A DNA stretch of 64,000 nucleotides from Octopus sinensis (GCF_006345805.1 NC_043006.1:33976001-34040000), one strand, 5' to 3'; shown: positions 7,523 to 63,123, counted from the stretch's first letter. The notes: generated by a model not told the origin, from the letters alone. A program made the numbers and translations.

Positions 7523-7583
<61 letters not shown>

Positions 7584-7955: not shown

Positions 7956-7961
<6 letters not shown>

Positions 7962-8985: not shown

Positions 8986-8989
8986 TTAA

Positions 8990-9977: not shown

Positions 9978-11300
9978 ATGGAATCCCCCATCTCTTATTC
10001 ACCTGTGACTAGTGATGCAGGATCACCGGCGGTGTCGCCAAAGAAAAAAGAGGCGGGGTCGCCAAAGAAAAAAGATATTCCAGAACCAGCGAAAAAATTT
10101 TCGGAAGTAGCTGGCAAGAAAATTTAAAAAATTAATGTGGAAAACCTAAAGAAACATGCAGACTGTGTGTCAAAAGAGGGCACGGAAGTAACCGTGGCTT
10201 CAAACGCCCAAAAACAGGAGGAAATTACAAATAGAAGAATAATTTATAAGACCTTCAATACAACAAGCAGATCAATACAAAAAATAGAGGAGAAAAAAAT
10301 CGAAAATTGCTTAAAGCCGATAATGGATAAAATCACATATATCAATCGAGGGAAGAAATACGGCACAGTGGAGGTGAGATTCACAACAGAGGAGGTAGCT
10401 AAGAAGCTATCCATGGAACCAATAAAAGCGGAGGATATTGTTCTCCTACCCCTGTATAAAGGCAAAAGAACATCAAAGATCACAATGAATGATATTCCGC
10501 CAGAAGCGGATGCCGAAGTTCTGGTGGCAGCAGTTATGGTAGGCCTGGAGGAAAAAATAAACTTCCTCCAGGCCACTGTAGAGGAGGAAGAATTCTGGAA
10601 AGGGCAACGGATAATAATAGCCATCCAGGCAGAAATACAAACCCTGGAGGAGATTCCAGAGACTCTAAAGATAAGCGAAGAAGATAGAGTCAGAGTCTTC
10701 GTAGAGGGCAGAAAGCCGAGGTGCTTCGGCTGCGGTAAGAAAGGGCATGTAAGGGCAGAATGCCAACCCCAACCCAAACCGCAGGAAGCAGCTCAGCCAA
10801 GCGGAAAAGCAGAAGAGGTGTCATCAGAAACAGCGCTGGTCGGCCCAGGAGGGACGGCTGAAGGTGTGGAGGTGACAGAGGCAGCGGAACCAACGGCGGA
10901 GGAAAAAAAGAGCGAGGAAACGAAAAAGGAGGAGGGGTGGTCAAAAATCACTAGAAAAAAAAGAAAAACTGAAACCACCCCTCCCAAAGTAAACCAAAAG
11001 AAAAAAAGAGAGTCGTTGAACTCATTTATGGCCGTTAAGGCCACGAACAATAGACTCGGTAATGTGTTGGCAGCGATGGCCAAAGTAGAAAAAATAGGGA
11101 GGAAAAATGACTATGTATTGTACAGAATAGGCCGGAAGGATTACGGACGGATAAAGTCCGAATTTTTTCATGACGTAGGCCCGCTCAGAATGGATATAAC
11201 ATCTCCATATATATTCGAGGGCCTGCGTCAGACTCCCCCACGAGGCCCAGAAAAAGAGACAAACAAAGAAGAAAAGGAAAAAACCGAACCACTGATATAA
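9978..11300 (+). pseudogene. LINE ORF1 (nucleic-acid-binding, zinc knuckle); one premature stop at 10125-10127
   Basis: ATG 9978 is in frame with the track ORF at 10137 (MESPISYSP...KKFSEVAGKKI*KINVENL); CCHC knuckle CFGCGKKGHVRAEC. Confidence 0.88.
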
Positions 11301-11308
11301 GGTAAGTA

Positions 11309-14300
11309 ATGGATTACATTTATGTTGGTTGTTTGAATGTGCGCGGCCTGGGAGCAGGCTGGAAGCAAGGTCGCTTCCTGCATGATATCAGGTCGCGTAA
11401 TTTAGATGTTATTGTTGCTACAGAAACCTGGTTAGAGGGGCCAAGAGGTCTACTCCCGCTGTTTGACGGCTACGAGAGTTTTTTCTCTCCTGGCAGTCCT
11501 ACAGGCGGGAGAGGGGTGTTGGTCCTATTAAAAAGAAACCGGGTTTCTGAGAAAAAGTTAATTTTTGCAGATCCAGAAGGTAGGCTGGTCGTCATGGATT
11601 TGACGTTCAGTAATGGTAAAGTTATCAGACTGGTTGCAATTTACGCACCCAACAGTAAAAAAGGGCAAAGTGATTATTTTCGTGATCTAGAAAAATTTCT
11701 TGGTACTTCGCATTCATTAGTGGTGCTAGGAGACTTTAACACAATTTGCAAAGCGGATGTAGATTGTGTTGGCTCGTGTCCAGATAGGAGAGGTAACAGT
11801 GGCTTCATGGAAATGCTAAGCCGCTTTGAGCTAGCAGATCCGTATAGGCGGGAATTTCCGAACGCTCCATTGTGGACATGGTAAAACAGCGACGGATCTT
11901 CCAGGTCATATATAGATAGAATTCTAATTAGAAAAGTAGACAGTAAAATAGCTAAGTGTCCACAGTTTTACCCGATCAGCTACAGTGATCATAAAATGGT
12001 CACTTGTAAGCTTGACATAGATAAGGTTAGAAATAGAGGAGTACAAAGACCGGATTAGGAACATAATTCAGAGGGCACTATCCGGTACCATCATTAATAA
12101 CAAATGGTGGTACGCCCTCAAACGAGCCATCAAGTTTGAGTCTATTAGATATAGCATAGGAGTAGTGGCTAGAGAGGCTAGAGGGGATAATACTCTAGTT
12201 AAGGAATTAGAGGAAGCCATGAAAACTGGCTCTGCGGCTCAGGTGGCGTCCAAGAGACTGGTGTTAAACCAGCACCTCGAGGCCAAACACATGGGCTGCA
12301 TTGTCAGGGCTAGAATCCGCCATATGGGATGTGAAGGAATCAACGCCGTGAGATGGGCCCGAGTGGTGGAAGCTCAGCATGGTAACGGTGCCACGATTCG
12401 ATCTTTGACGAACCAACAAGGTGAGTTGATAAACGAACCCGAGGAGATGTGTGAGGCCTTCCAGGAGCACTTCTCTCAGCTTTTCGGTGAGTGCGGCGGA
12501 CTGGATAGGAGGAGGGCCTTTACGGACCTACTCGACGGGCTGCCGCGCTTATCGGGGCGAGATGCGGAGGGCTGTGAAGGGCCAATCACGCCTGAGGAGG
12601 TGTTTGAGGCAATGGCGGACTGCGGCGCAGGCAAGGCGCCGGGTTTGGATGGTCTACCCTATGAGTTATATAAGAGTATGCCAGACTTGTTCGGGCACCT
12701 ACTGGCGGAGGTCTATGCGACTGGCAGCAGAACGGGCTTATACCCAGATCTGTGCGCCGGGGAGTAGTGACTCTCGTCAGAAAGGACCCGAGCAAGGGGG
12801 AGTGCATTGATAATTTCAGGCCCATCACTCTGCTAAACACAGAGTTGAAGATTTTGGCCAAAGTGTTATCGAAAAGATTGGCGCGTGTCGCGGATGGTCT
12901 GATCGGAGAGGCACAGACATGTGCCGTTCCGGGCAGATCCATTCAGGATAATCTCCATCTAATGCGGTACACTATAGAGGGGTTTAATAGTGATTCTGGC
13001 AAGGGTGGGGTACTGGTCCATTTAGACCAATCTAAAGCCTTTGATAGGGTCGACCATCGTTACCTGGTATCTGCCCTGGCACAGTTCGGGCTGAGCCTTG
13101 GCTTCCTCAGGTGGATTATCCAAATTTATGATAACATCGACTCGGTAGTTCGGGTGAACGGCTTCTTGTCCAAGCCGTTCAAAATCAAACGCTCGGTTCG
13201 TCAAGGGTGTCCGCTCTCCCCGCTTTTGTACGTGATGGCTCTAGAGCCATTACTGCGAAAACTGAGCGGCATCCCGAGACAGCCGGGTAATGGAAAATCA
13301 GTGTCAGCGTACGCGGATGACATCACCATCATCGTAACCGAAATGGACCACCTATTTAAAGTAAGCAAGGCCATAGAGGTTTACGAGACGGTGACAGGAG
13401 CAAAAGTTAATCGCGAAAAGTCAGTCGGCTTGCAACTCGGCACCTGGAGAGGCAAGTCGATGCCTCCTGACAGCGTCGTGGGACGTTGGACGGAGGGTCC
13501 GATTAAATTGCTAGGGGTCTGGTTCGGTCCAGACCTCCAAATAGAGAAGAATTGGGGCGAGGTAACGAGCAAGGTGGCTGCAGTAGCCAAGACCTGGTCT
13601 TGGCGGTGGCTATCCTTGAAAGGGAGGGCGGAGGTGGCCAATGTGTTTATCGCATCGGTTATCACCTACCGCCTTTCCGTCGTTCCTTGCCCCGATTCGT
13701 GGTTGACCAAGTTGGAAAGACAGCTCTTCTACTTCTTGTGGAAGGGTAGGAAACCACTTGTGAAACGCTCTACTTGCTGTCAACAACCGTTAAAGGGTGG
13801 GCTAGGGATGCCTTGGCTGATGATGCGCAGACAAGCGCTGAGGTTAAGACATCTGTGGCTCTACCTTGATGGTGAACGGGTGTGGTCTCCGTTAGCAAAA
13901 CTGATGTTTCCCAAGTTCACTAGTTTCGGTGGACGGGAAACCTGGCTGAATCGTAGATCGAAACTCGGTACTTGGTACACGGAGTGTCGCAAGGCTCTCC
14001 TGCCATTCCGTCGCTCGGGCAACGCCTGCGGTGGGGGTTCCACCACATTCTTCTATAGAGGGTTGGTAGAGGCGGAATGTGAAGATACCTTGGGGGAAAC
14101 CCTAGGTCTCGACGATAATCAGCTGGCCAGTCTGTTCCGACGTACGTTCAAGCCGAGGACACTGGACAACTTCCAGAAGTCTCTGGCATGGCAATGCTAC
14201 AGAGGAGCTCTACCTGTTCGGGATAAACTCGCAAGGCACGGTGGCCGAGACAGTCCGATATGTCCAAGATGCGGGCGGGATAGGGAAACCGTCCCGCACG

Positions 14301-14662
14301 CTATTGTTCATTGTCCGGACGTGTCTGAGGTGTGGGTTTATGCCGAACAGCTGTTGTCAGGTACACGAAGAGTACAGCTGTCGACTGAGTCGATTACAAA
14401 AATTGACCCACCGGATTTCCTCGTGAATGAAGGTAAGTTTCGTTTTCTCGTTGTAGTAGCAATTGCGAAAGAGGTGATATGGAAGACGAGAGTGAAAGGT
14501 TTACAGTCAGGCAAGTTCATCTCTGGCCCTGGTTTGATGAATTATTTCATCTTCCACCTGAAAAGGAAGATAGGGCTGGAGAGAATATGCCTGACTAGGA
14601 GAGTGTATGAAGAACGATGGAAAGATGTGGCACGGAAGTTGCGAGTGAAAGATACAACATAA
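11309..14662 (+). pseudogene. LINE ORF2: AP endonuclease, reverse transcriptase and C-terminal CCHC finger
   Basis: LNVRGL, ETWL, IYAPN, GDFN, YIDRI, YSDHK; FRPITLLNT, LDQSKAFDRVDH, RQGCPLSPLLY, YADD; CPRC..ETVPHAIVHC. Lesions: TAA at 11882, frameshifting deletion near 12040, 1-nt deletion near 12720. Confidence 0.95.
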
Positions 14663-14922
14663 ATGTAATACCAAGCGCAACCAAAAGTATCAGTGGGGAG
14701 GCGGGGCTCGTGGGGTCCGAGCTAAACCCGCACCCACTCCACCTGTAATGTCTTCCGGTCTATTCCATCATTCGATTTTGTGTATATTCTTGTAATTTCA
14801 TGTTATTTTTAAATCCGATTTTTTGTAAAAACCATCCGTATGTCTGACCCCACATCAGATTGTATTGTCCCCTCTATGTTCGCCCCTTGTGGGTAGTAAT
14901 AAAATCAACTTACCATCTCTAA

Positions 14923-15309: not shown

Positions 15310-15490
15310 ATATTTGCCTATCTATTTGCCTGCCTGTCTGTTTGTCTGCCTGCCTGTCTGCCTATCTGTTTGTCTGTCTGTCTGTTTGTTTATCTGTCTG
15401 TCTATCTGTTTGTCTGTCTATTTGCCTGTCTGTCTGTGTGTCTGTCTGTTTGCCTGCCTGTGTGTCTGTCTGTCTCTTTATTTGTCTATA
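15310..15490. repeat. Degenerate (TGTC/TATC)n microsatellite
   Basis: Direct inspection. Confidence 0.9.
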
Positions 15491-16148
15491 CGGTGGACTC
15501 TCCTGTCGTGAACGAGAGATAAGGGGTTCTACAATGTTTTCTTGAACAACCTGCACACACGAGTTGTTTATAGGGATCAGATGTTTGTCCCTCACACCAA
15601 CAAATCGATGTTGCCTGAACAGGTACATTGTGTTCCATATGTCAGATGTCAAAATGAACGCAGAATAACAGGAGACGAGGTCTTTAGTTCACAAGGCGCT
15701 GCCCAATCCGGAAATCAAAACTTCACTCACGCAATCGTGAGTACAACACTCTAATACAGTCATGGACAACCAGCCTCTAGTGTGACCTTCTGGATGGCAC
15801 GCCAATCAAAAATTACTTTGAATTTCTTTTTGCAGTGCGGCCCGTCTGATAATGAGCGATGTCTCATGCAGCTCGCTTCTTGGAAACGGTGACTCATGCC
15901 TACCCTAACCACTAGGTCACACACACCCTATTCTCTAACAAAAAAAATAGTGCTTACAATGGCTTCGAAGTATCGGCAAGCTTAACCTTGTTCAGACTCT
16001 GCATTGAAGACCAAGGAGGCCGAAACTTCAGAGTCACTGTCAACACTATTCGTGTAAATGCGATAAGAATCTACTCTACGAAAGTGCTGCTTAATCCTTT
16101 AGTTTAATGTAAAATTGGTTTTAGATATAACTTGACATACAATAAAGA

Positions 16149-16151
<3 letters not shown>

Positions 16152-16213
<62 letters not shown>

Positions 16214-17939: not shown

Positions 17940-19800
17940 TAACAATGGCGCTATCGACCAGCTGTGGAGAACTAATGCTGTCTGATTCCGATTTGATTAA
18001 ATCCTTGTTACGATGTCTTTCAGCCAGTTCTAGAACAAAGTAACTCAAAGGCTCTGTTGATAAAAGAGAAATAAACGATCTTTTATTTCTTCGCCAAAGT
18101 AAGAATTGAGAATATTGTATCTGTGATGGTGTACCCTAAAGCGTTGGAAGAAATGAACTTCGCAGACATAAAGGAAACTATAATATCATACTATAAAATC
18201 AATGAAGCTGTTTATTGCTGAAAGGACATGAAAGTAGATGCCATCGGAACCAATACATCGATATGGATAAACTACTGATAGAAACCGTTTTTGGGAAGCT
18301 GATAACTTAGGGGCAGCAGGGAAATCTGCTGAAGATGACCTTATACAAATGCAACAAATTGATGGACTTCACAATTCTGCATATCGTTCTAGAATATTAG
18401 AACACTTGCAGTTTCAGGAAATGCTATTACCGAGTTGTTGGTAATAGCAATTTGAAACGATTAATGATTTTATTTTGGTTCCAACTAATTATAGTAATGG
18501 TTTCAAAATTTGGCATAAGGTTAGCAGTTTTAGGGGACAGGATAAGTCGGTTTCATTGACCGCTTAACTGGCACTTATTTTTTCGATACCGAAAGGATAA
18601 AAAAAGAAATAAGTCGATCTCGGCGGAATTCGAACTCAGAACCTAAAGACAGATGAAATGCTGCTGAGCATTTCCCCCGGCGTGCTAACGGTTCTGCCAG
18701 ATCTCCGCCGATGTGGGGATGGAGTTTAGACTGGAAAAATGCGCGAAAGCAACATTAAAAAAAGGCAGAAGGACAAACAGAAGTTCCATAATGATAGTGT
18801 GTTGATAGAATTGTCAGTGCACCAGCGAAGTAACTTGAGTGTGTGCCACCCGATGCGGCACTTGACTTTGTCTCTGCCTCCCTCCGAGCCCAGAAGTCTA
18901 TACATGCTTATGCAGCAGAACGATGGGGAGGACGGCCCCCTCGCCCTCCCCTAACTATGCTACTGAGTGCCACATGTTAAGACTTTGAGAAAAAAGCTTA
19001 CATGTAAGTCTTGCCCACAATATTAGAATGTGTCCCGTTTTTTTGCGGAAGATATGCTATATCTGTCAGGAGAAGAAGCAGTTTAAGCATGTCTGGTTAT
19101 CTCGAAAAGAATTTGAGAAATGCTCCCAGTTGATGCTGATGCAGATAGTGACCAAGGGTTGAGCAATGTCTTCAGATCTAGGGACAGTGACGCCAACTCA
19201 CCAACCTCCGTTAAATTAAACAATATTGAAAAACAGATGCAAGTAGATACGGTCAGCGACGTCACCATTATCTCAAAAATGTTTGGAGGAAACATGGCTC
19301 ACGATCTGGAATCTTGCATTGGCAGACTCAAGCAATTAAATGGCTCAGTTATCCAATTGCTTCGAAATTTTCAAACCATTTGGACGACGGAAATTACGAA
19401 CGATGTATCGTATTTGACGGCATAAAAGACGCCCGAACATATTTGATTCCTCACCATTTTAGCAGCGCATATTCAGGAAGACAGGCTTTTAGCGTATTAA
19501 AGTTTATAGGAGGCCCTATTTCGTATAGTATAGGACCCAGGTGATATTTTTCAGAATTTTTTTTTTATTTGGAAAGAAAGTGTATTTTGTATGTCATCAA
19601 ATACGATAATTTCCGTAACTGCCGTTGAATGATCATATTGGAAAGAATGGTGCCGACATGTAATAGCCTTTCACTTATTCATCACACACAATCTAAAGGG
19701 TGCTTAAAAGGTTTTAAAGCCGAAATAAAATTAAAAACTAACGCTGAACACTTACCGATCGTCGAGACAAATTTCTGTACATATTTATCTTCTTGTAGCA
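17940..19800 (+). mobile_element. Old Ty3/Gypsy gag-protease remnant, interrupted by a SINE at 18486-18709
   Basis: Gag-like YPKALEEMNFADIKETI..KLFIAER..LIQMQQIDGLHNSAYRSRILEHLQ; retropepsin-like VKLNNIEKQMQVDTVSDVTIIS (D at 19246); GCLKGFKAEIKLK linker. Confidence 0.7.
18486..18709 (-). mobile_element. tRNA-derived SINE, family 2 (Nin/Deu-like core)
   Basis: Head GGCGGAGATCTGGCAGAACCGTTAGC, B-box GAGTTCGAATTCC, core CCTTTCGGTATCGA. Confidence 0.8.
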
Positions 19801-20064
19801 AAATTGAAGTAAATACCAATCAATGGCTTAATGAAAAGAGCTGAATCAGAAAGAAGTAGGCTTCACCATTGGGCGCAAGCAATTTACATATTTGCATAGA
19901 TTACAACGTAGGAGTAAATTCTGACTGTTACCCTGACGGCATAATTCATGCTGGCAGATAAGAAGCTTGCCAATGATTTCAATTTCTGATGAAATTCAGA
20001 AAGTAACAACTGTGAGTACTCCCTTTATGTTATTACGTTCGACATGTGTGTCATGCAGGATATA

Positions 20065-20286
20065 TATTTCTTTATTGCCCACAAGGGGCTAAACATAGAG
20101 GGGACAGACAAAGGGATTAAGTCGATTACATCGTCCCCAGTGGGAAACTGGTACTTTATTTATCGACCCCGAAAGGATGAAAGGCAAAGTCGACCTCGGC
20201 GGAATTTGAACTCAGAACGTAACGACAGACGAAATACCGCTAAGCATTTCACCCGGCGCGCTAACGTGTCTGCCAGCTCACCGCCT
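20065..20286 (-). mobile_element. Young family-2 SINE carrying the LINE-matching tail (type 1)
   Basis: 11-bp TSD TGCAGGATATA (20054-20064 and 20287-20297); B-box GAGTTCAAATTCC; tail TGTCCCCTCTATGTTTAGCCCCTTGTGGGCAATAAAGAAAT. Confidence 0.92.
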
Positions 20287-20960
20287 TGCAGGATATAAGC
20301 GACAAGCGCCATATTTGAATGTTCTATGGAAAATATATTTGGCGATGTCAACGGGATTGTAGTGATCCTATAACGGTGCGCGCGCGCGCACCGTCCATTT
20401 TCTATTTCGCGCGTGTGGTGTTGGTGCCTTCACCAAGAGAGAGGAAGGGCCCTCTCGCGCATGCGCGAAGCACCGGAAGAAGAACCCTATTGCCTACGTA
20501 GCAGTTAGCGAGGCAAGGGGGTCGTAGAACGTTTGACCACTAGCAGCAGTCAGCGGGAACTTGGGACAGCTGCGACCGAAGGAGACGGACGTGTATTCTC
20601 GCTGTCCAGCTTTGATAGCAGTCGGCCGAAAAGCTTTTAACCAAATTGTTGCCGACCACATTCATCTTCTCTGTTCCGGACGCCATATTTAACCCGTTCT
20701 GTTTTTAGCGGCTGAACATTGTAAATATTACAATTCGATTAACTTTCAGCCTTGCGCGCCCAGAACCAAGGACATCAGATAACCACTTATTGTTACTGTT
20801 ACCAAGAAAGAGAATAAAGTAGTATATATATCTTTTACGTCTGCGTCTTGTTGTTTCTGACTGGTAGAATTCTGGATTTTAAAGCAACGACTAGTGATTG
20901 CTTTCTTGTACCCCGAAAGTACAAGAGAAGATATATTCGCTCACACTAAGTTCGTTACAG

Positions 20961-22452: not shown

Positions 22453-23289
22453 CCTTGTAGTGATCCTATAACGGTGCGTGCGCGCGCACCGTCCATTTTC
22501 TATTTCGCGCGTGTGGTGTTGGTGCCTTCACCAAGAGAGAGGAAGGGCCCTCTCGCGCATGCGCGAAGCACCGGAAGAAGAACCCTATTGCCTACGTAGC
22601 AGTTAGCGAGGCAAGGGGGTCGTAGAACGTTTGACCACTAGCAGCAGTCAGCGGGGACTTGGGACAGTTGCGACCGAAGGAGACGGACGTGTATTCTCGC
22701 TGTCCAGCTTTGATAGCAGTCGGCCGAAAAGCTTTTAACCAAATTGTTGCCGACCACATTCATTTCCCTGTTCCGGACGCCATATTTAACCCGTTCTGGT
22801 TTTAGCGGCTGAACATTGTAAATATTACAATCGATTAACTTTCAGCCTTGCGCGCCCAGAACCAAGGACATCAGATAACCACTTATTGTTACTGTTACCA
22901 AGAAAGAGAATAAAGTAGTATATATATCTTTTACGTCTGCGTCTTGTTGTTTCTGACTGGTAGAGAACTGGATTATTAAAGCAACGGCTAGTGATTGCTT
23001 TCTTGTACCCCGAAAGTACAAGAGAAGATATTCACTCACATTGAAGTTCTTTACAGGATAATAATTTATTAGGACGACATTTTCACTAGTGGCCGCACTA
23101 CTGCTAAACTGGAGCAGAAAATAAAGGCAGTTACTCAGCACCTATAGCATTGCTGATACCGAAAAGAAGTGTCTTTCGTGCAGATAAGCTGATCTTCCGA
23201 GGCTATGAAATCTGCAGACAAGGTATCCGGCTAGACAATACGTTAGTGAAGACCTGCAACTTAAACAACCCAACATCCACGTAGAATAG

Positions 23290-23487
23290 TTAGCACGCCG
23301 TGCAAAATGCTTAGCGGCATTTCGTCCGTCTTTACGTTCTTGAGTTCAAAATGCCGCCGAGGTCGACTTTGCGTTTCATCCTTTTGGAGTCGTTAAAATA
23401 AGTATCAGTCAAGTACTGGTGTCGATGTAATCGACCTAATCTCCTCCATCCAAAATTTCAGGCCTTGTGCCTACAGTAGAAAGGATA
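23290..23487 (+). mobile_element. Family-2 SINE with tail type 2
   Basis: Same head and core as 20065-20286; tail AAATTTCAGGCCTTGTGCCTACAGTAGAAAGGAT. Confidence 0.85.
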
Positions 23488-24194
23488 TTAAAGAAAGATT
23501 TGGCTAAACCATCCGTTGTACAGATATTTGAGAGAAGAGGTCGCAGTTGCTACAGCTGCCATCTACCATATACTATCTCGCGAACTGTGTAGGGCGGAGT
23601 GTTTCCAACCCTGTACTTACCACGATTTCTATCCGAAGCTGCAACTATTTTGATGTTGACAGACGAGATTTGGCGATTGTCTGGACTATGCAAAGAACTC
23701 GACACTTTTTATTAAGGGGAACTGACCATATGCCATGAGAGTTCATATTTAATCCCAGAAGGGAGTTGCCTAAAAATAATATCTGATAGCATGTCATTGT
23801 GAGCAATCCATGACCACATCTAAAGAAGGGATACCCGACTGATTGGCATAATGTCATTCACAGGCATACTTCAGCCTGTGGCCCACAAGCATGTTGTGTC
23901 TCCACTTTCTGCCTTCCCCACGGCTTCTATAATAGTTTCTGCTATCTGGAACTAGCTGAGCCCATGTTCCCTCCACTTGAGCACGCCTATCTCACTCTTT
24001 TCTCCCCCTTCCATTATACTTGTTGTAGCCAGCGTACTAGATTCAGCCCTTCTTTCTCTAGAATGTCATCCCACTGGAATTCTCTCATCGCTCATGTCTT
24101 TCCCCGTATATGTTCAAGAAGAACATTAATGGCGTTAGTCTCATCAGTCAAAGAACGCCTGCAAACACCATGGCTACTCTCCTTCCCTTTATTT

Positions 24195-31160: not shown

Positions 31161-31764
31161 TATATATATATATGATAAAATAACATAAAGTAAAAATAAC
31201 AACAGAATATTATTTGAAATATGTTCAGCTGCTATTTCTAGCTGGCTGAGCTACCATGTAGAGGCTCTCATGTCTTGTGATACTGTTAGTTATGGTGGAA
31301 GAAATGAGCTGTGAATTATGCATTTTCAAATAGCTTCTGTCTTTGAGTTAATCCACAGCAATACTTTGAGGAAATGCTTGTCAAAATATTGATTTCTTGT
31401 GTGTGTGTGAGGAAACTTTAAACTTGCATTAAGCAAGCTGGTTCTGCTTTGTATATCTTGGAAGTGAAACTGGATCTTGTGGGACATAAGTGCCATCATA
31501 GTCGAACGATTTAGTTGGTAGTTTCTAATGTTTTGGCATTGGAACACAATTTTGGAAAATCAATAATCTTCTGTGATCCTTTCTTTTAATAAGTGAATTA
31601 GATACAGCCACAGGCATGGCTGTGTGGTTAAGAAGCTTGCTGTGTGACTACAGGATTTCAGGTTTGATCTAACTGCATGGACCTTGGGTAAATATCTTTC
31701 ACTATAGCCCTGTGTTGGCCAAACCTTGTGAGTGGATTTAGCAGACAAAAACCTAAAGGACCCC

Positions 31765-33050: not shown

Positions 33051-34379
33051 CAGCTACAGGAAACTTGAATTGCTAATTTACATACTGTAAATGTTGGGGG
33101 ATTTCTCAATGGGAATCTTCGTTCACACAGTATCAAGGTATGATATGATTTATACAATATATATAGCACCTTTATAAACAGGGCTAACTAGGTTGCGAGT
33201 CCCTGTCCTACAAGCAAATATCTTGCATACTGGGGTAGCCTTTGTTTTGTGTATTTTGAATAAGTAATGAACAACCTTAATCAATTTTCAAATCTTACTG
33301 GATTCTTATCAGAGATGCCTACATATGTTTGACCAAACTAGGGGAAAACAGTCAGTCGATCTGGTTCTGTACTCAACAATAACTGTAACCCTTTCTAAAG
33401 ACAACAGCACAATGGCGGAATGTATTAAATGGTTACATTTCAGTGAATGGAAATTGGGTCACACACCTGCTTCATTAAATGTTTAATTTTTTTTATGCAA
33501 TTAATTGGAGAATAGGAAGTGTCCATGACCTTTGTAAACTCTCAGAAATGATATTGGCTGCTACTGTGTCTGAATATCTGTGAGTCAATGTATGTAGAGA
33601 GAATAGGGGCAGAGTAGGAACCCAGACTCTGGTCTAAATGCATGCGACAGAGAGAACTTGTTAAACTCACCCGAGGACCAGGTGAATGTATGGTTGTTGT
33701 TGAGTCCCAGAACAACTCTGACTGAGTAGATCTATCATCAAAGGTATTCCAATCCCCTCTCTTTTTAAAGTGTATCTAGGACTGGGTTATTCAATAAATC
33801 CCTATATTTCAGAGATAATATGGTGTGATTTGAGGGTAAAACTGAACAGCAATCAATTTCTGGAAACCACTAGGGATGCATACAAAGAGAAACAAGTTTT
33901 ACACATTGAAGAATCAAAATTAGGTTGCATGTCCCCACCCTACAAGCAAATATCTTGCATGCTGGGGGTGGTCCTTTTGGGTCCCAATGCAAGGGACATA
34001 ACTCCAATGAACTAAATATTTTTCTCTCTGCATTTAACTTGGGTGATTTCTCCTAAGAATTTTGTTCCAATTTTTTACAGTGGTCATAAGACCTACAAAC
34101 TGGAAGTGTCATTTCCAAGACTCTTGTGACTAAGAGCCCATGTCATATTATTCCTTTCAGCTATTTCTGGTGAGGGCTGAGACTGGTTCTCGACTTCTAG
34201 TATGAAATCAACTGGAAATTTGGTTATTATAAATAATTTCTATTATCGAAAGGAAAAGTTTTGTTTTGAGATCAATTTTGCCTGTCATCCTTTAGGGGTT
34301 GATAAAATAAGTACCTGTTGTCTAGCCTCCTTCCCCTATAATTTTAGGCTTTGTGCAAGTTGTGGAAAAGAATGATATC

Positions 34380-35089
34380 AAATTTTAGCACAAGGCCAGC
34401 AATTTCAAGGGTCGGGTAAGTCAGTTGCATCATTCCCGGTATTAAACTGGAACCACTTTTATCAACCCTGAAATAATAAAGGGCAAAGTTGACATCTATA
34501 GAATTTGAATTTAGAACATGAAGATAGATGAAATGCCACTAAGCATTTTTGTCCAAAGTGCTAACAATTCTGTCAGCTTACTATCTTCCTTGAAAGGAAT
34601 GATAATAATAATAATCCTTCCTACTGGAGGCACAAAGCCTCAAATTTGTGGGGAGGGGACCAGTTGATTACATAGACCCCAGTGTTTTACTGGTAGTTAA
34701 TTTATCGACTCCGAAAGGATAAAAGGCAAAGTTGACCTTGGTGGAATTTGAACTCAGAACATGAAGACAAACGAAATACCACTAAGCATTTCACCCAGCA
34801 TGCTAATGATTCTGCCAGCTCACTACTTTAATAATAATAATGATAATGATGATGCTTTTGAATTTTGGCACAAGGCCAGCAGTTTTGGGGCAGGGGGCAA
34901 GTCGATTAAATCAACCCCTGTGCTCAACTGGTACTTATTTTATCAATCCCAGAATGATGAAGTGCAAAGTCAACCTTGGCAGAATTCAAACTCGGATCAA
35001 AAAAACAGAAGACATACCATTGAGCATCTTACCCAGTTGGCTAATTATTCAGCCAGCTCATCACCTTAATAATAGCAATGATGATGATA

Positions 35090-35120
<31 letters not shown>

Positions 35121-35338
35121 CCTTTCTGCTATAGGCACAAGGCCTGAAATTTGGGGATGGGGGATGAGTCGATTACATTGACCCCCCAGTACTTAACAGG
35201 TGCTTATTTTTATCAACCCCCCCAAAACGATGAAAGGCAAAGTCAATCTCAGTGGAATTTGAACTCAGAATGTAGTGGCAGAAAAAATACTGCTAAGCAT
35301 TTCGGCTGGCATGCTAACAATTCTGCCAACTCACCGCC

Positions 35339-35414
<76 letters not shown>

Positions 35415-38107: not shown

Positions 38108-39305
38108 TATAATCTGTTTATGCATAGCACAGTGTGAATTAGAAAAGCAGAATTGAATTTAAAGAACACACACACACACACAAATATGTCCTATATCATT
38201 ACACAAGGACACAGAAGTGGGTTGCTGATAAACGAAGTACAATACATTGTTAGGTTCATACACATACACATTTACGCATACATGTATATATTGATATATA
38301 CAAAATGCACACACTTGCATATAAAAACAAACGTGTGTGTGTGTGTAAATGTTATTACATCAAGTTCTTTTATCTTTTACTTGTTTCAGTCAAGTGGCCT
38401 TGCTGGAGCACCACCTTGACGAATTTTTAGTTGAATGAATTGAACCCCTAACTTATTACCTTAAGCCTGGTACTTATTCTATCATTCCATTTTCTTGAAC
38501 TGCTAAGTTACAGGCACACAAAGGTACCAAAACTAGTTGTGAAGCGGTAGTGATGATACACACACACACACACATGATGGGCTTCTTTCAGTTTCCATCA
38601 ACCAAATCCACTCACAAAGCTATAGTTGGCCTGATGCTATAGTAGAAGACACTTGCCCAAGGTGCCACACAGTGGGACTGAACCCTGAACCATGTGGTTG
38701 GAACACAAGCTTCTAACCACACAACCATGCCTGTGTTGAAACGATTCACCATTAAACTGAAGAATCACTCAATATTTTGCAGTAGAGCCCATGTTTATTA
38801 AACTCTTACAAGAAGAGCAAAGTTGGCTTTGAAATTTCTGCCTGTTGGCATTCGTCAGACAGACATATGTTTCAATTACTCTTTTACTCATTTCAGCGGT
38901 CATGCTGGAGCACCACCATTGTATATACATTATATATATGCTTTCTTTTTCCCTCCTTCTTCCCCTAAGAAATCTTTTACGTTTATTAGGAAGGCATGCC
39001 CCCGTTCAAACTTATCAACTCGTGAATGTTACATATTTTCCTAAATCTCGAGGATGCCTAAGTTTACCTGTATTAGTTAATGGGTTAATTATGAAACTCT
39101 TATTGAGCATTTTTTTTCCTCTCTTTACATTCTGAGTTCACATTTTTTCCAGGTTGACTTTAACTTCCATTCTTTCAGCGGTCAATAAAATAAGTCCCAA
39201 TTGAAGACTGGACTTGATGTAATTGACTACAACCTTCAAAGATAACCAACTTACTGCTAAAATTGGAAATATTAATTATTTGTTTGCTAATATTATCATC
39301 GTCAT

Positions 39306-39699
39306 CCAGTTCTATATTTAAGAGATGAGGAATTATTTACATTATTTACATTAGACGGATATTTGTCCTCATCTTGATTGTTGCTAACACAACATTTTGG
39401 CTGATATACCATCCAGCCTTCATCAGGTGTCTTGGGGAAATTTCAAACCTGGGTTCTCATTCCTAAGGTATTTTCCGTTGTTGTTGTTATTATTATTATT
39501 ATTATTATTTAGGTCATTGCTTAGAATCGAACTCGGAATCTTGGGGTTAGTAGCCCTAATACCTTAGGAATGAGAACCCAGGTTTGAAATTTCCCCAAGA
39601 CACCTGATGAAGGCTGGAGGGTGTATCAGCCGAAACGTTGTATTAACAACAAACAAGATGAGGACAAATATCCGTCAAATGTAAATAATGTAAATAATG
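39306..39699. mobile_element. Inverted pair of hammerhead-bearing family-A repeats; minus copy 39307-39556 has a tRNA-like head, plus copy 39558-39699
   Basis: About 140-bp shared arms; flanked by ATCATCGTCAT (39295-39305) and ATCATCGTTAT (39700-39710). Confidence 0.85.
39599..39644 (+). ncRNA. Candidate minimal (dimer-type) hammerhead ribozyme
   Basis: GACAC, CTGATGA 39604-39610, extra A, stem II GGCTG/CAGCC, GAAA 39632-39635, palindromic ACGT stem III, GTT site, stem I partner GTATT (GTGTT in the other two copies). Confidence 0.6.
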
Positions 39700-39989
39700 A
39701 TCATCGTTATTATTATTAAGGCAGAATCGTTAGTACACTGGACAAAATGCTTAACGCTATTTCATCCATCTTCATGTTCTGAGTTCAAATTCTGCTGAGG
39801 TCAGCTGTACCTTTCATCCTTTCGGGGTCGATAAATTAAGTGCCAGTTACGCACTGAGTTTGATGTAATAGGCTCATCCCCTCCTCCCAAAATGGCTACC
39901 TTTGTGGCAAAATTTGAAACCATTATTATTAATGGGTGTGGGGGCTAGCAGAAACATTACCATGCTGAGATAAATGTATAGCAGCATTT

Positions 39990-40262
39990 CTTCCAACCCA
40001 CCCTGACTGGCCTCCGTGCCGGTGGCACGTAAAAAGCACCATCCGATCATGGCCGTTTGCCAGCCTTGTCTGGCACCTGTGCTGGTGGCATGTAAAAAGC
40101 ACCCACTACACTCACAGAGTGGTTGGCGTTAGGAAGGGCGTCCAGCTGTATAAACACTGCCAGATCAGACTGGGTCTGGTGCAGCCTTCTGGCTTCCCAG
40201 ACCCCAGTTGAACCGTCCAACCCATGCTAGCATGGAAAGCAGATGTTAAACGATGATGATGT
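39990..40262 (+). mobile_element. Family-C RTE-type non-autonomous repeat with (GAT)n tail
   Basis: GGTTGGCGTTAGGAAGGGC..CCAGC motif and tail CATGGAAAGCAGATGTTAAACGATGATGAT. Copies: 43885-44232, 47925-48300, 51427-51592, 52490-52770 (-); 53000-53270, 57575-57810 (+). Confidence 0.75.
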
Positions 40263-41109
40263 GCTGAGTTCAAATTCTGCTCAGGCCAATTTTTCCTTTC
40301 ATCCTTTTGGGGTTGATAAAATAAGGACCAGTTGAGCACTAAGACTGATGCAATCGATTTACCTTTCTCCCAGAAATTCTGGCCTTGTGCCAACATTTCA
40401 AATCATTATTATTATCATTATTTTATTATTGATATTATTGTTGTTTGTAACTATTGTTCTTACTAGTGATACAATGTTGTTTGGAGTTCACCCCCCCCCC
40501 CGCACCTCATGTTGCTCTTCTTTCCCTTCTTACTATATAAGTCCAATAAGCCTATGTGTACCTTTGCAAGCATGTGCAAGAGTGTATTGGTCCACCAGAG
40601 TACAAGTGAGTGAAGGCTTAGACCTTGACAACCTTTTTATCTCCAACCTATCTCATTTCTGTCTTGTACATCGTTACCCTCTCACTTCCTCCATCTGCCG
40701 TTCTGTTACATTAACCAAACAGCACTCAATTTGCATATTGATATTATAATTTGCATACAAGGCATTACAATTTTTTTTGTGTTGTATTTTTGATGATAAT
40801 GCTGAAGAAGTGTGTTAACTGTTATTGCATAATATGGCCAACCAGCTTGTGTAATAACAATTAGCTTACTGAAACATGTATACATTCCACAAAGCATAAA
40901 ATACAGTTATATTTCTTTTATATGATAGCTTGGATTCTGCACAGCAGCTTTTCTAGAGATATAATAATGTGTTGAGGATAGGAATGGAGTGTAGAGTATT
41001 TCAGTCATACCTAATTTCTTAAGTAATGTCACACCTTTCTGTGTACCCATTTAAAGTATCTGTCTGTCTGTTTGTCAATACATACACCCCCACCATATGC
41101 ATATGCATG

Positions 41110-41169: not shown

Positions 41170-42999
41170 CATGATAGTAAATGATGCTATATATGTATAC
41201 ATACACATGAGTGTGTGTGTGTGTACATGTATGTATGTATATTTATATATATGTATATATAGTTAGGCATGCATGCACCCACACACACACGTCTATAGGC
41301 TCAGACATACTCTGCCCATGCCTCACTCTCCATGCACCTGAATATAAATACGTGTTACTCATTAACTTTTAGTTTCATACACACTCACACACATGTGCAC
41401 GTACAAAGATACATACACTTACACACACACACACACAAATGCATGCACACAGATCAATATACAAATAGATCATATCTTTTTATTTTCTCTCCCCCCCCTC
41501 TCTTATAGATGAACACATGTGACTGTGCATGCACACACACACACACACACACACACACAGTCATGGAGTAATCCGAATTAATCTAATCTATAAGTGTTAG
41601 AATTCAGAGTTTATTAATTTTTAATTTCATGTTAATTATTTATTTATCTATCACTTCATTTAATTGCTTATCTCTTCAATAAATTATTTATAACTTGATA
41701 GATAATTTTATTTGAAACTAGAGTGATATTATAATAAATCAACCTTTCTCTTCAAAGCTTGCTGGCCTTGTGCCTAAATTAGAAATTGTTATCACCACCA
41801 CCACTCTCTCCACCATCATCATCCTTGCTGCAGCTACCATCATCATCACTACAGCCATCATCATCTCAACTGCTGCTGCCTCCACCCCACCCCTGCTGCC
41901 AATTCCATACCCGCCGCTATCATCACAACTAACTACAGTATCATCCTCGTTACTACCACTACTGCCATGACCACCACCATCACTATCACCACCATGGCCA
42001 TTATCCTCATCATTAATGGAAGATGGATTGCCAGAATCATGAGACAAAATACCACGTGGTATTTCCTACAACTATTTATATGTTAAATTCATTCCTCACT
42101 AGGATGAAATGACTGCACACACACACACACACACATGCATGCAATGTGCGTTTGTGTGTGTGTGTGTGTGTGTGCATGTATCTGTGTGTGTGTGTGCATT
42201 TATCTGTGTATGTGTGGTGGACTAGAACAATTCTGAGGCGTACCTTTTGAAAATAAGTATCCTCTGTAACGTAGATATGATGGTATTTTCAATAGGAATA
42301 TCATTAAGTTATACTACTCCACTACGCTCAATGTAGCTACCATTATAACAGCTAATAAGAGGATAACTTGGAAGATACAGCTTTGCCTTTCATTCTTCTG
42401 GAGTTGATAAAATAAAGTACCAGTCAATCAACAGGTTAATGTTATAAGTTAATGCCCACCCCTCAAATTTACTGGCTTTCATTGTTAGTTCTGAATTCTG
42501 TAGAATTGGCATACCATGATGTGCTTGGGCTGATGAAAGACAGATAAAAATGAAATTGTTTATTGACCCAGAATTTTCATCACCATTGCTGCTCCTCTCA
42601 TCACACAATGTTCTAAACTACCCATCACTCTCCACCATCCTACATGTTGCCCTTAATGAGTGAATAAATGGGATAGCTGGTGAACATATGAAATTCTTAA
42701 TAAATGTCTAGTTGTATCAGAGAGATGTGTATGTGTGTGCACAAATCTATGCATCTATATGTGTGTGTACATATCTGTGTGTACATATTTGTGTATATTT
42801 GTTTTTAAGTGTATATATGCATCTATATATGTGTCTGCACACAGACCTGTAGGTTTTTATACGACTGTGTATGTTTCAGTTTAAGAATGTATATTTTTAT
42901 GTGGTATGTGTGTGTATGTCAGTGGTGGTGGTGGTGGGGGGTGCAATATATAATGGCATTAACTAGAATGAAGAACAGCACATCTTTAAAACAGGATTA

Positions 43000-62711: not shown

Positions 62712-63123
62712 AGATGGTGAGCTGGCAGAAACTTTAGCACACCGGGTGAAATGCTTAGTGGTATTTCGTCTGCCATTACATTCTGAGTTCAAATTCCGCC
62801 GAGGTCGACTTTGCCTTTCGTCCTTTCGGGGTCGATAAATTAAGTACCAGTTACGCACTGGGGTCGATGTAATCAACTTAATCCCTTTGTCTGTCCTTGT
62901 TTGTCCCCTCTAAGTTTAGCCCCTTGTGGGTAGTAAAGAAATAGGTATTTCCTCTGTTACGCTCTGAGTTCAAATTCAGCTGAGGTTGCTTTTTGCTTTT
63001 CATCCTTTCAGGGTTGATAAATTAAGTACCAGTGGCATACTGGAGTCAATCTAATCGACTGCCCTTCCCCCTCCCAAAACATTTTAGGCCTTGTGTCTAG
63101 AGCAGAAAAGATTCTATTCATTA
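62712..63123 (+). mobile_element. Family-2 SINE dimer: tail-1 copy followed by a 5'-truncated tail-2 copy
   Basis: 10-bp TSD TTTAAGAATA at 62702-62711 and 63124-63133; junction AAAGAAATA|GGTATTTC at about 62943. Confidence 0.85.

What the first reader, a model, noticed from the sequence alone, without database searches (positions are those of the whole stretch)
23460..23472. Covarying 3' hairpin with a constant CUUGU pentaloop across three SINE tail types and the LINE
One SINE head carries three different tails, and each folds a 4-bp stem around CTTGT. GCCC/GGG(C/T): LINE 14882-14894, 20077-20089, 62919-62931. AGGC/GCCT: 23460-23472, 35133-35145, and 63086-63098 with a G-U. TGGC/GCCA: 34866-34878, 40380-40392, and 34386-34398 with a G-U. 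Compensatory stem changes around a fixed loop indicate selection on RNA structure. Inference: the hairpin is the ORF2 recognition signal, and the SINE has swapped tails among related LINE lineages. I do not know of a description of this motif.
Basis: partly seen in the sequence, partly recalled or inferred. Interest (0 to 1): 0.88.

Follow-up and report, generated by a model that had tools for sequence, protein, structure and literature searches.

The report
Shared 3' hairpin of cephalopod LINEs/SINEs
A 13-base RNA hairpin (4-bp stem whose letters change in pairs, around a nearly fixed CUUGU loop) sits at the 3' end of a family of L1-like jumping genes and the short parasitic SINEs that borrow their machinery in a cephalopod genome; it is a good new example of a mechanism already known from fish and plant elements, not a new kind of thing.

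Summary

The window is cephalopod DNA. It carries a tRNA-like SINE with a CORE-like middle domain, and a broken L1-like LINE (ORF1 10137-11300, ORF2 11309-14662). The LINE's last ~46 nt are shared with the "type 1" SINE tail.

The same hairpin sits near the 3' end of related LINEs elsewhere:
- Argonauta SINE tails have GGCC/GGCU.
- A JGI LINE has GGCC/GGCC followed by (ATT)n.
- A cuttlefish LINE has UGGC/GCCG.
- An ENA LINE has AGGC/GCCU, the window's type 2 stem.

Across nine lineages the flanks are ~35% identical, while the loop plus closing pair is 97% identical. Of the outer stem pairs, 25 of 27 form (arm-swap permutation P=0.0002). RNAalifold recovers the hairpin on its own.

Best reading: this is the cis signal by which a "stringent" LINE's proteins pick their template, and the SINE has copied it. 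One insertion (62713-63123, single target-site duplication) is a type-1/type-2 chimera, which shows how tails get exchanged.

Binding by ORF2p is inferred, not shown. The principle is already published for L2, CR1 and plant L1 elements. I found no description of this particular motif.

The parts
10137..11300 (+). LINE ORF1 (387 aa), with an RRM-like stretch and one CCHC zinc knuckle (CFGCGKKGHVRAEC)
   Evidence: ORF and translation. One search gives only weak nucleocapsid-knuckle matches. One search finds no Pfam family.
11309..14662 (+). LINE ORF2 in three pieces: AP-endonuclease 11309-11884, linker 12165-12767, and RT plus C-terminal CCHC (zf-RVT) 12752-14662. The pieces lie in different frames, so this copy is broken.
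   Evidence: ORFs in frames 2/0/2. Exo_endo_phos 3.4e-11, RVT_1 5.9e-32, zf-RVT 1.7e-08; best solved-structure matches are human L1 ORF2p (1.8e-34) and L1 endonuclease (1.4e-05).
14663..14906 (+). LINE 3' UTR. The last ~46 nt (14860-14905) form the tail shared with type 1 SINEs.
   Evidence: sequence; 14860-14905 matches 62897-62942 at 87% and 20106-20066 at 85%.
14882..14894 (+). Hairpin in the LINE tail: GCCC-CUUGU-GGGU, followed by AGUAAUAAAAUC
   Evidence: covariance-model hit of 38.5 bits
20065..20286 (-). Full-length SINE with type 1 tail; hairpin GCCC-CUUGU-GGGC at 20077-20089. Flanked by the 11-bp target-site duplication TATATCCTGCA (20054-20064 and 20287-20297).
62713..62942 (+). Full-length SINE with type 1 tail (hairpin 62919-62931). 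It is the 5' half of a chimeric insertion.
62943..63123 (+). 5'-truncated SINE with type 2 tail (hairpin 63086-63098, AGGC-CUUGU-GUCU). It is the 3' half of the chimera. The single target-site duplication TTTAAGAATAA (62702-62712 and 63124-63134) brackets both halves.
   Evidence: the 11-mer occurs only at these two places in the window, chance P~0.003, and neither half has a duplication of its own..
23283..23490 (+). SINE copy, slightly 5'-truncated, with type 2 tail. The hairpin AGGC-CUUGU-GCCU at 23460-23472 is the site named in the finding.
34368..35412 (-). Four SINE copies head to tail, each sitting in the (ATT)n tail of the next. Hairpins at 35133-35145 (type 2), 34866-34878 (type 3), 34628-34640 (type 2, loop UUUGU) and 34386-34398 (type 3).
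40259..40438 (+). 5'-truncated SINE (starts at the B-box) with type 3 tail; hairpin 40380-40392. It is inserted after the (GAT)n tail of a different SINE family.
39691..39931 (+). SINE copy with type 3 flanks but stem UACC-UUUGU-GGCA (39897-39909). The third pair is flipped to C-G and the second pair is broken.
18497..18709 (-). Old SINE copy with a decayed type 3 hairpin, UAAC-CUUAU-GCCA (18511-18523)
39247..39259 (+). Degenerate type 3 hairpin remnant (CAAC-UUACU-GCUA) of the old SINE copy at 39115-39273
41763..41775 (+). Extra tail found only by the covariance model: UGGC-CUUGU-GCCU. No recognisable SINE body lies upstream.
   Evidence: (32.8 bits)
34346..34358 (+). Decayed type 2 tail (AGGC-UUUGU-GCAA) of a short SINE fragment at 34268-34372

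Best explanation
The 13-nt hairpin is the core of the 3' tail by which a group of related 'stringent' L1-like LINEs of cephalopods recognise their own RNA as the template for target-primed reverse transcription. It has a 4-bp stem of free sequence, a C-G closing pair and a CUUGU loop.

The proposed steps are:
1. A LINE-encoded protein binds the hairpin. This is most likely ORF2p, reading the loop bases and the stem shape.
2. Twelve to 13 nt further on, the RNA ends, either directly or in (AUU)n repeats that can anneal to the nicked AT-rich target.
3. cDNA synthesis starts there.

The CORE-type SINE carries a copy of this tail and so gets mobilised in trans. Its three tail types come from three related LINE lineages and were acquired by RT template switching between RNAs.

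Shown here: shared LINE/SINE tail; covarying stem with conserved loop across lineages; constant spacer and repeat; a chimeric insertion.

Inferred: which protein binds, and that binding is needed for mobility.
For: 1. LINE and SINE share the tail: 14860-14905 matches 62897-62942 at 87% (sequences).

2. One SINE body carries three tails. Bodies of type 1, 2 and 3 copies are 73-86% identical.

3. The motif sits near the 3' end of related LINEs fetched through their ORF2 proteins, so the stem played no part in selecting them:
- L010: GGCC-CTTGT-GGCC, then 13 nt, then (ATT)n
- L009, Acanthosepion pharaonis: TGGC-CTTGT-GCCG
- L004 and L006: GGC-CT(T/C)GT-GCC
- L014: AGGC-CTCGT-GCCT, the type 2 stem
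- L003: GGGC-CTTGT-GACC
Ten or more Argonauta hians SINE/LINE tails have GGCC-CTTGT-GGCY.

4. Covariation over 30 tails: 89.2% of cells pair, against 66.4% after shuffling (0 of 500 shuffles reach it). The covariation score is 0.56 against 0.19. Slid controls pair at 17-43%. Three of the four pairs show changes on both sides.

5. RNAalifold predicts the same four pairs without being told.

6. Lineage-level test with 9 representatives: flank identity 0.34-0.36, loop plus closing pair 0.97, 25 of 27 outer pairs formed, arm-swap permutation P=0.0002.

7. The hairpin appears in the minimum-energy fold of 7 of 10 tail contexts.

8. The spacer from hairpin to (ATT)n or to the element end is 12-13 nt in types 1-3 and in L010.

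9. The chimera 62713-63123 has a single target-site duplication.

10. Precedent: ORF2p of zebrafish L2 LINEs binds its 3' stem-loop, with the loop giving specificity and the stem read as structure (PMC4176376). A plant L1 lineage has a tail hairpin with conserved loop and compensatory stem changes, shared with SINEs (PMC3472496).
Against: - No binding or mobilisation data exist.
- A 4-bp stem is thermodynamically marginal, and fold z-scores of the tails are not significant (-1.25 to +0.43).
- In the window's own LINE, the minimum-energy fold pairs UGUGGG with an upstream CCCACA instead.
- The sense strand is only modestly better paired than the antisense (89% against 82%).
- The sequences are related, so cell counts overstate the number of independent events. 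I count about 3-4 independent double changes.
- One Argonauta LINE copy keeps the stem but has a different 4-nt loop, AGCC-AGGU-GGCU. One A-family copy (L005) has a broken 5' arm.
- No type 2 or 3 LINE was found in this genome, because only 64 kb of it is available.
- The organism of the ENA LINE contigs is unknown.
Confidence: 0.7

Rival explanations
1. The signal is real but is read by ORF1p (an RRM plus a CCHC zinc knuckle) or by a host RNA-binding protein. It would then serve RNP packaging, RNA stability or localisation rather than template choice by ORF2p.
For: - The LINE encodes an ORF1 with a CCHC knuckle.
- From general knowledge, knuckle proteins bind exposed G or U in small loops.
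- Nothing here discriminates between the proteins.
- LINE families B and C carry a second covarying hairpin just downstream. That shows the tail has more than one structured element, with possibly divided roles.
Against: - SINEs keep only the last ~45 nt of the LINE and are still mobilised. In every tested stringent system, the tail works through the RT-containing protein (PMC4176376, PMC1636434).
- The fixed 12-13 nt distance to the 3' repeat or end fits positioning of the RT at the priming site.
Confidence: 0.13
2. The conserved element is the linear word CCUUGUG, read as single-stranded sequence. The flanking complementarity is incidental.
For: - The 7-nt word is 97% conserved across lineages, while the outer stem is only 48% identical.
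- The stem is short, and the folds are not more stable than shuffles.
Against: - 25 of 27 outer pairs form across nine lineages that use five different stems, with arm-swap P=0.0002.
- 0 of 500 shuffles reach the observed pairing, and slid controls collapse to 17-43%.
Confidence: 0.08
3. The hairpin is a 3'-end formation or termination signal. It would act with the AAUAAA that follows it in type 1 and in LINE tails, or it would act on the DNA or cDNA strand, for example in second-strand priming.
For: AATAAA or AATAAAT follows the hairpin within 2-30 nt in the LINE tails and in type 1 SINEs.
Against: - Type 2 and 3 SINE tails have no AAUAAA but keep the hairpin.
- SINEs (Pol III) and LINEs (Pol II) use different 3'-end machineries.
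- G-U pairs are frequent on the sense strand (12.5% of cells), and pairing is lower on the antisense.
Confidence: 0.05
4. There is no function. The tails are simply inherited from a common ancestor, and the palindromy is chance plus copy number.
For: - Most instances in the window are copies of a few source genes.
- Related sequences can beat column shuffles without any structure (caveat stated).
Against: - Flanks have diverged to ~35% identity while the loop stays at 97%. The stem changed letters at three positions yet stays paired in lineages whose ORF2 is only 42-60% identical.
- Dead copies do decay (18511, 39247, 34346), which shows what neutrality looks like.
Confidence: 0.04

Closest known systems
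Eel UnaL2 / UnaSINE1 and zebrafish ZfL2-1/ZfL2-2 3' tails (L2 clade, 'stringent' LINEs; PMC1636434, PMC4176376)
   Same: - LINE and SINE share a ~45-60 nt 3' tail.
- The tail has a stem-loop with a sequence-conserved loop and a stem read as structure.
- The tail is followed by short 3' tandem repeats: (TGTAA)n there (my recollection, not checked), (ATT)n here.
- SINEs are mobilised in trans.
   Different: - Different LINE clade: here the LINE is L1-like, with an ORF1 carrying a CCHC knuckle and a C-terminal CCHC in ORF2.
- The hairpin is much smaller (4 bp plus a pentaloop, no bulge or internal loop).
- The loop sequence is unrelated.
- Nothing has been tested experimentally here.
Monocot L1-clade LINE1-1_ZM lineage and its maize/sorghum SINEs (Ohshima 2012, PMC3472496)
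   Same: - An L1-clade LINE with a conserved ~50-nt 3' end shared with SINEs.
- A hairpin with compensatory stem mutations and a conserved loop (UCU) and flank.
- It is taken as evidence that stringent recognition exists, and may be ancestral, in the L1 clade.
   Different: - Plant rather than animal.
- Different loop and stem.
- Those elements end in poly(A); here they end in (ATT)n or directly.
SINE superfamilies with conserved central domains and exchangeable LINE-derived tails: CORE-SINEs, MetaSINEs and bivalve HCD SINEs (PMC4824008, PMC11481361, PMC4758252). This includes the octopus OR1/OR2 SINEs of Ohshima and Okada 1994.
   Same: - A tRNA-type head plus a conserved core, with a tail that differs between subfamilies and matches different LINEs.
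- Template switching is the proposed route.
- CR1- and L2-type tail stem-loops with compensatory changes are drawn for bivalve SINEs.
   Different: - Here the three tails come from related LINE lineages that all keep one hairpin motif, not from different LINE clades.
- A single-TSD chimeric insertion catches the exchange directly.
- Whether this SINE is OR1 or OR2 itself could not be checked, because no reference sequence was available.
Microsatellite-targeting Tx1-group LINEs (Kibi, Koshi; Kojima and Fujiwara 2004, from memory, not checked here)
   Same: An L1/Tx1-like LINE whose copies and SINE partners end in, and pile up within, a trinucleotide microsatellite.
   Different: - Target specificity is not established here. 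Only 4 of 8 full-length SINE copies sit in (ATT)n, mostly in the tails of earlier copies.
- The clade has not been placed by phylogeny.

Membership tests
Stringent-type LINE/SINE pair with shared 3' tail (Okada/Ohshima model) | SINE 3' end is homologous to the 3' end of a LINE in the same genome | tested here: met
   Met for type 1: 14860-14905 (LINE) matches 62897-62942 at 87% and 20106-20066 at 85%. For types 2 and 3, only LINEs from other organisms match.
Stringent-type LINE/SINE pair with shared 3' tail (Okada/Ohshima model) | Tail folds into a stem-loop supported by compensatory changes, with conserved loop nucleotides | tested here: met
   3 of 4 pairs covary, loop plus closing pair is 97% identical across 9 lineages, arm-swap P=0.0002
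Stringent-type LINE/SINE pair with shared 3' tail (Okada/Ohshima model) | Short tandem repeat at the very 3' end, downstream of the stem-loop | tested here: inconclusive
   (ATT)n follows the 12-13 nt spacer in type 2 and 3 SINEs and in LINE L010. The type 1 SINE at 20065-20286 and the window LINE end without repeats. LINE families B and C end in AAUAAAUAA.
Stringent-type LINE/SINE pair with shared 3' tail (Okada/Ohshima model) | Stem-loop is required for retrotransposition and is bound by the LINE ORF2 protein | not testable with these tools
   Needs a retrotransposition assay and RNA-binding assays.
CORE-SINE superfamily | [quoted passage not shown] | tested here: inconclusive
   A B-box-like GAGTTCAAATTCC and an A-box-like TTAGCACGCC are seen in the alignment. 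ARAGORN finds no tRNA, and Rfam gives no tRNA hit even at E<=1.
CORE-SINE superfamily | Conserved ~60-nt CORE central domain | tested here: inconclusive
   The central block CTTTCATCCTTTCGGGGTCGATAAA..AAGTACCAGT is kept in Argonauta SINEs that have a different head, and in SINE-like repeats of an unrelated metagenome organism (L012, L013). So it behaves as a superfamily core. Its likeness to the MIR/CORE consensus is from memory, with no reference sequence compared.
L1 / Tx1 group of non-LTR retrotransposons | AP-type endonuclease, RT and C-terminal CCHC motif in ORF2; ORF1 with RNA-binding modules | tested here: met
   Exo_endo_phos, RVT_1 and zf-RVT. Best solved-structure matches are human L1 ORF2p (1.8e-34) and L1 EN (1.4e-05). 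ORF1 has a CCHC knuckle.
L1 / Tx1 group of non-LTR retrotransposons | Placement inside the clade in an RT phylogeny with reference elements of all clades | not tested
   No reference set of CR1, L2, RTE, Tx1 or L1 RTs was available. The PDB holds no CR1, L2 or RTE protein, so 'best hit is L1' is weak.

The most novel reading that the evidence does not exclude
A single minimal RNA tag (any 4-bp stem closing on C-CUUGU-G, 12-13 nt from the 3' end) is the common template-recognition code of a whole, ancient group of L1/Tx1-like LINEs in cephalopods and perhaps in other lophotrochozoans.

Because the code is shared, several LINE lineages could cross-mobilise several SINE families. Here, different heads in Octopus-like and Argonauta genomes carry the same tail. 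That would help explain the very large SINE load of octopus genomes. It would also give an animal L1-group element with stringent, hairpin-based template choice that can be dissected experimentally.
Probability: 0.3. Interest if true: 0.6.

Novelty: new member of a known kind. Interest (0 to 1): 0.4.

Why it matters
How LINE reverse transcriptases choose their template is understood in detail for only a few elements: eel and zebrafish L2, silkworm R1/R2 types, and human L1 through poly(A). This hairpin would add three things:
- An animal L1-like lineage that uses a very small, easily mutated RNA signal.
- A natural series of stem variants with one loop, spread across LINE lineages whose ORF2 is 42-60% identical.
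- SINEs that have moved between those lineages.

It gives a concrete handle on which LINEs drove the SINE expansion in octopod genomes, and a simple marker for annotating these tails. It does not change the accepted model; it extends it.

Tried and rejected
- **tRNA and Rfam searches.** ARAGORN on the window and Rfam at gathering threshold and at E<=1 on a SINE found nothing, so the head could not be assigned to a tRNA.
- **Thermodynamics.** Dinucleotide-shuffle z-scores for ten tail contexts were not significant. The case rests on covariation, not on stability.
- **Metagenome scan with a protein alignment of the ORF2 C-terminus.** The peptide patterns were poor and no relative was found.
- **Second metagenome scan with a SINE-core DNA pattern.** It returned only two contigs, from another organism that shares the core but not the tail.
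- **Genome-contig scan with P0008.** Nothing found.
- **Naming the organism of ENA sample ERZ21867824 (loci L003, L006, L014).** I tried a lysyl-tRNA synthetase exon. The exon is too conserved, so this was inconclusive.
- **Literature search for the literal motif GGCCTTGTGCC.** It returned only unrelated primer-type hits.
- **The 49-bp repeat next to the LINE end (14905-14953 = 8803-8851).** I considered it as a giant target-site duplication and rejected that. It is a terminal inverted repeat of a MITE-like element, with an inverted copy at 9250-9306.
- **A longer outer helix around the hairpin (UUUC/GAAA).** I considered it and dropped it. It appears in some folds, but the sequences are low-complexity A/U runs and RNAalifold does not support it.
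- **L007 and L011.** These contigs end too soon after the ORF2 stop codon to show a tail.

Full report
**1. Is the observation there?**

Yes.
- GCCC-CTTGT-GGG(T/C) at 14882(+), 20077(-), 62919(+)
- AGGC-CTTGT-G(C/T)CT at 23460(+), 35133(-), 63086(+)
- TGGC-CTTGT-GC(C/T)A at 34866(-), 40380(+), 34386(-)

CTTGT itself is not enriched in the window: 159 occurrences against 175 expected. CTTGT flanked by a 4-bp stem occurs 13 times against about 3 in shuffles, and 9 of those 13 are these sites. The excess is due to copies of repeats. It cannot be read as nine independent events.

**2. What the elements are**

A self-comparison and a multiple alignment show one SINE family with about 16 copies or fragments in the 64 kb. 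Each copy has:
- a ~95-nt head with a B-box-like GAGTTCAAATTCC,
- a conserved middle block (TTTGCCTTTCATCCTTTCGGGGTCGATAAAATAAGTACCAGTT...GGGGTCGATGTAATCGACTTA),
- a tail.

Bodies of copies with different tails are 73-86% identical, so "one SINE body, three tails" holds. ARAGORN and Rfam do not recognise the head as a tRNA.

The middle block recurs in two other settings. It appears with a different head in Argonauta hians SINEs, and with a different remainder in two metagenome contigs of another organism. It therefore behaves like a superfamily core. It looks like the CORE domain, and octopus CORE-SINEs (OR1/OR2) are known (PMC4824008, PMC4758252). I could not compare it with a reference sequence.

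The site at 14882 lies in the 3' UTR of a LINE:
- ORF1 at 10137-11300, with a CCHC knuckle.
- ORF2 in three frame-shifted pieces: AP endonuclease 11309-11884, linker 12165-12767, and RT plus C-terminal CCHC 12752-14662.
- The best solved-structure matches are human L1 ORF2p (1.8e-34) and L1 endonuclease (1.4e-05).

I therefore call it L1/Tx1-like, without a phylogeny to place it. Its closest protein relatives are from Argonauta hians (57% identity) and from unnamed contigs (about 60%), with weaker matches in the cuttlefish Acanthosepion pharaonis. The window is therefore cephalopod, probably octopod, though the species was not determined. The last ~46 nt of the LINE match the type 1 SINE tail at 85-87%. 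That is the classical LINE/SINE shared tail.

**3. More copies in the window**

- 34628-34640(-) AGGC-TTTGT-GCCT
- 39897-39909(+) TACC-TTTGT-GGCA
- 18511-18523(-) TAAC-CTTAT-GCCA
- 39247-39259(+), degenerate
- 41763-41775(+) TGGC-CTTGT-GCCT
- 34346-34358(+) AGGC-TTTGT-GCAA

These show what post-insertion decay looks like: broken pairs and loop changes. They should not be counted as evidence for selection.

**4. Relatives elsewhere**

I fetched DNA around ORF2 relatives through their proteins, so the stem played no part in choosing them.

*Family A (57-60% identical to the window ORF2)*
- L010, a JGI contig, has a 270-nt 3' UTR ending ...TTTCCG-GGCC-CTTGT-GGCC-AATAAAAGAAATC-(ATT)n.
- L005 has a damaged 5' arm.
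- The Argonauta LINE copy itself reads AGCC-AGGT-GGCT: the stem is kept and the loop differs.
- Around that LINE, at least ten Argonauta SINE or truncated-LINE tails read GGCC-CTTGT-GGC(T/C/A)-AATAGAGAAATCTA. This is plainly the homologue of the window's type 1 tail (GCCC-CTTGT-GGGC-AATAAAGAAATA), with the second stem pair flipped from C-G to G-C.

*Families B and C (42-44% identical)*

| Locus | Source | Hairpin |
|---|---|---|
| L014 | ENA | CCCCCCAAAACTCA-AGGC-CTCGT-GCCT (the window's type 2 stem) |
| L003 | ENA | GGGC-CTTGT-GACC |
| L004 | ENA, two tandem copies | CGGC-CTTGT-GCCA |
| L006 | ENA | AGGC-CTCGT-GCCA |
| L009 | Acanthosepion pharaonis | TGGC-CTTGT-GCCG |

In families B and C the hairpin lies about 650-730 nt after the stop codon and 30-45 nt before the point where copies stop being alike. 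It is followed by a second hairpin that also covaries, then by AAUAAAUAA.

So LINEs with type 2-like and type 3-like stems exist, though I could only find them in other organisms.

**5. Is the stem under selection?**

On 30 tails aligned without gaps (A2), the four proposed pairs behave as follows:
- They are formed in 89.2% of cells, against 66.4 +/- 3.0% when 3' letters are shuffled (0 of 500 shuffles reach the observed value).
- The covariation score is 0.56 against 0.19.
- Sliding the 3' arm by 1-3 columns drops pairing to 17-43%.
- Three of the four pairs show changes on both sides: pair 1 is GU, GC, AU or UA; pair 2 is GC (21 sequences) or CG (3); pair 3 is CG (15) or GC (9). The closing pair is C-G in 28 of 30.

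RNAalifold, given no structure, returns exactly these four pairs.

Copies are not independent, so I repeated the test on nine lineage representatives:
- Pairwise identity is 0.36 in the 5' flank and 0.34 in the 3' flank.
- It is 0.48 in the outer stem and 0.97 in the closing pair plus loop.
- 25 of 27 outer pairs form.
- Swapping 3' arms among lineages reaches that number in 0.02% of permutations.

By my count there are 3-4 independent double changes: pair 2 between octopus and Argonauta type 1, pair 1 between types 2 and 3, pair 3 between type 1 and types 2/3, and perhaps pair 3 again in copy 39897. That is few, but it is coherent.

Thermodynamics adds little. The hairpin is in the minimum-energy fold of 7 of 10 contexts, but z-scores are not significant. 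Pairing is somewhat better on the sense strand (89% against 82%), which fits an RNA-level element.

**6. Architecture of the tail, and how tails move**

From the hairpin to the (ATT)n repeat, or to the element's end, is 12-13 nt in types 1, 2 and 3 and in LINE L010. A GAAA sits at the same place in that spacer.

Target-site duplications define the ends:
- TATATCCTGCA flanks the type 1 copy at 20065-20286.
- TTTAAGAATAA occurs only twice in the window, at 62702 and 63124. It brackets a composite made of a full SINE with type 1 tail (62713-62942) directly joined to a 5'-truncated SINE with type 2 tail (62943-63123). Neither half has a duplication of its own. The chance of such an 11-mer match is about 0.003.

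This composite was inserted as one piece. It is what a reverse transcriptase would make if it began on a type-2-tailed RNA and switched to the 3' end of a type-1-tailed RNA. A dimeric source gene could also produce it.

At 34368-35412, four copies lie head to tail, each in the (ATT)n tail of the next. This suggests that the 3' repeat pairs with AT-rich or (AAT)n targets during priming.

**7. Mechanism**

The best-supported reading is that the hairpin is the recognition core of a stringent-type 3' tail. A LINE protein binds it, reading the loop by sequence and the stem by shape. That places the RT at the 3' end or repeat 12-13 nt downstream, and SINE RNAs carrying the tail are copied in trans.

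The pattern "loop conserved, stem free to covary" is what the zebrafish L2 experiments found functionally: loop swaps kill activity, stem swaps are tolerated, stem disruption kills it, and binding is by the EN-RT linker of ORF2p (PMC4176376). It is also what was described for a plant L1 lineage and its SINEs (PMC3472496).

ORF1p, with its zinc knuckle, or a host factor cannot be excluded. The rivals are ORF1p or host binding, a purely linear motif, a 3'-end formation signal, and no function. They are listed with their evidence in the rival explanations. Covariation argues against the linear-motif and no-function readings. The hairpin's presence in tails without AAUAAA argues against a polyadenylation role.

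**8. Comparison with what is known, and novelty**

In kind, this is the Okada/Ohshima shared-tail system. Two of its features are met here: a shared tail, and a covarying stem with a conserved loop. The 3' repeat is met for some tails only, and the functional requirement is untestable here.

SINE superfamilies that keep a core and change LINE-derived tails are also published, including in molluscs (PMC4824008, PMC11481361).

What seems new:
- the particular motif, for which no transposon paper contains the word (the octopus LINE literature I read deals with RTE and Dong elements, PMC9115989);
- its very small size;
- its retention across LINE lineages as far apart as 42% ORF2 identity, and across octopod and decapod cephalopods;
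- its occurrence in an L1-like animal LINE;
- the chimeric insertion.

I rate it a new member of a known kind, with interest 0.4.

**9. Limits**

- Only 64 kb of the source genome could be read.
- The source species, and the organism of the ENA contigs, are not identified.
- The LINE clade has not been placed by phylogeny.
- The number of independent compensatory events is small.
- One related LINE copy has a different loop.
- No experiment supports binding.

Noticed in passing
window 62702-63134: A full type-1-tailed SINE fused to a 5'-truncated type-2-tailed SINE, bracketed by one 11-bp target-site duplication (TTTAAGAATAA). It looks like a template-switch chimera or a copy of a dimeric source gene.
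   Followed up: yes
window 34368-35412 (- strand); also 39489-39509 and 5545-5583: Four SINE copies lie head to tail, each inserted in the (ATT)n tail of the next. Other (ATT)n/(AAT)n arrays in the window may be remnants of such tails. This suggests insertion into, or priming on, ATT repeats.
   Followed up: partly
window 37741-37763, 40217-40239, 43610-43632, 43899-43921, 47950-47972, 51462-51484, 52511-52533, 53221-53243, 57757-57779: A second, unrelated SINE family (about 9 copies) ends in (GAT)n. It has its own 3' palindrome, CCATGC(T/C)AGCATGG, about 15 nt before the repeat. One copy (37741) reads CCATGTTAACATGG, a two-sided change that keeps the pairing. It is probably the recognition hairpin of another LINE.
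   Followed up: partly
window 51190-51300 (+): A third SINE-like element with a tRNA-type B box (GGTTCAGTCCC), next to the end of another LINE fragment.
   Followed up: no
window 50102-50929 (+), ending near 51003: The C-terminal ORF (275 aa) of a different LINE. It ends in a C2H2-like motif (CNVCSHVCLSRAGLISHQRSC), and its 3' end lacks the CUUGU hairpin.
   Followed up: no
window 8803-8866, 9250-9306 (inverted), 14905-14953: A ~500-bp element with ~60-bp terminal inverted repeats (MITE-like). A third copy of the repeat abuts the 3' end of the LINE, so the LINE probably landed in or beside such an element.
   Followed up: partly
window 11884-12165 and 12752-12767: The LINE's ORF2 is split over three frames (2, 0, 2), so this copy is not coding-competent.
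   Followed up: partly
L004 6921-6950, L006 12274-12300, L009 13079-13100, L014 13086-13106: In LINE families B and C, a second hairpin follows the CUUGU hairpin. Examples are UUGUAC...GUACAA, UUGUAA...UUACAA and CAUUGUAA...UUACAAUG. Its stem also changes on both sides. AAUAAAUAA and the element end come next.
   Followed up: partly
L004 (ENA ERZ26052130), 1-16180: Two complete copies of the family C LINE lie in direct tandem with a ~7.5-kb period. This is unusual for dispersed LINEs and is compatible with insertion into a repeated target or into its own tail.
   Followed up: no
L008 12261-12272 (Argonauta hians): The LINE copy encoding P0002 has AGCC-AGGU-GGCU in place of the GGCC-CUUGU-GGCU found in the surrounding SINE tails. 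The stem is kept, and the loop is different and one base shorter.
   Followed up: partly
L012 1636-1689, L013 1355-1407 (JGI metagenome Ga0209782): The 38-nt SINE core CTTTCATCCTTTCGGGGTCGATAAATCAAGTACCAGTT is almost identical in repeats of an unrelated organism whose flanks and tail are entirely different.
   Followed up: partly
window 510-902, 15117-15545, 31560-32252, 53728-54510: Long 'ORFs' here are artefacts of (TG)n/(CA)n-type and (CTGT)n-type microsatellites, which are very abundant in this window.
   Followed up: no
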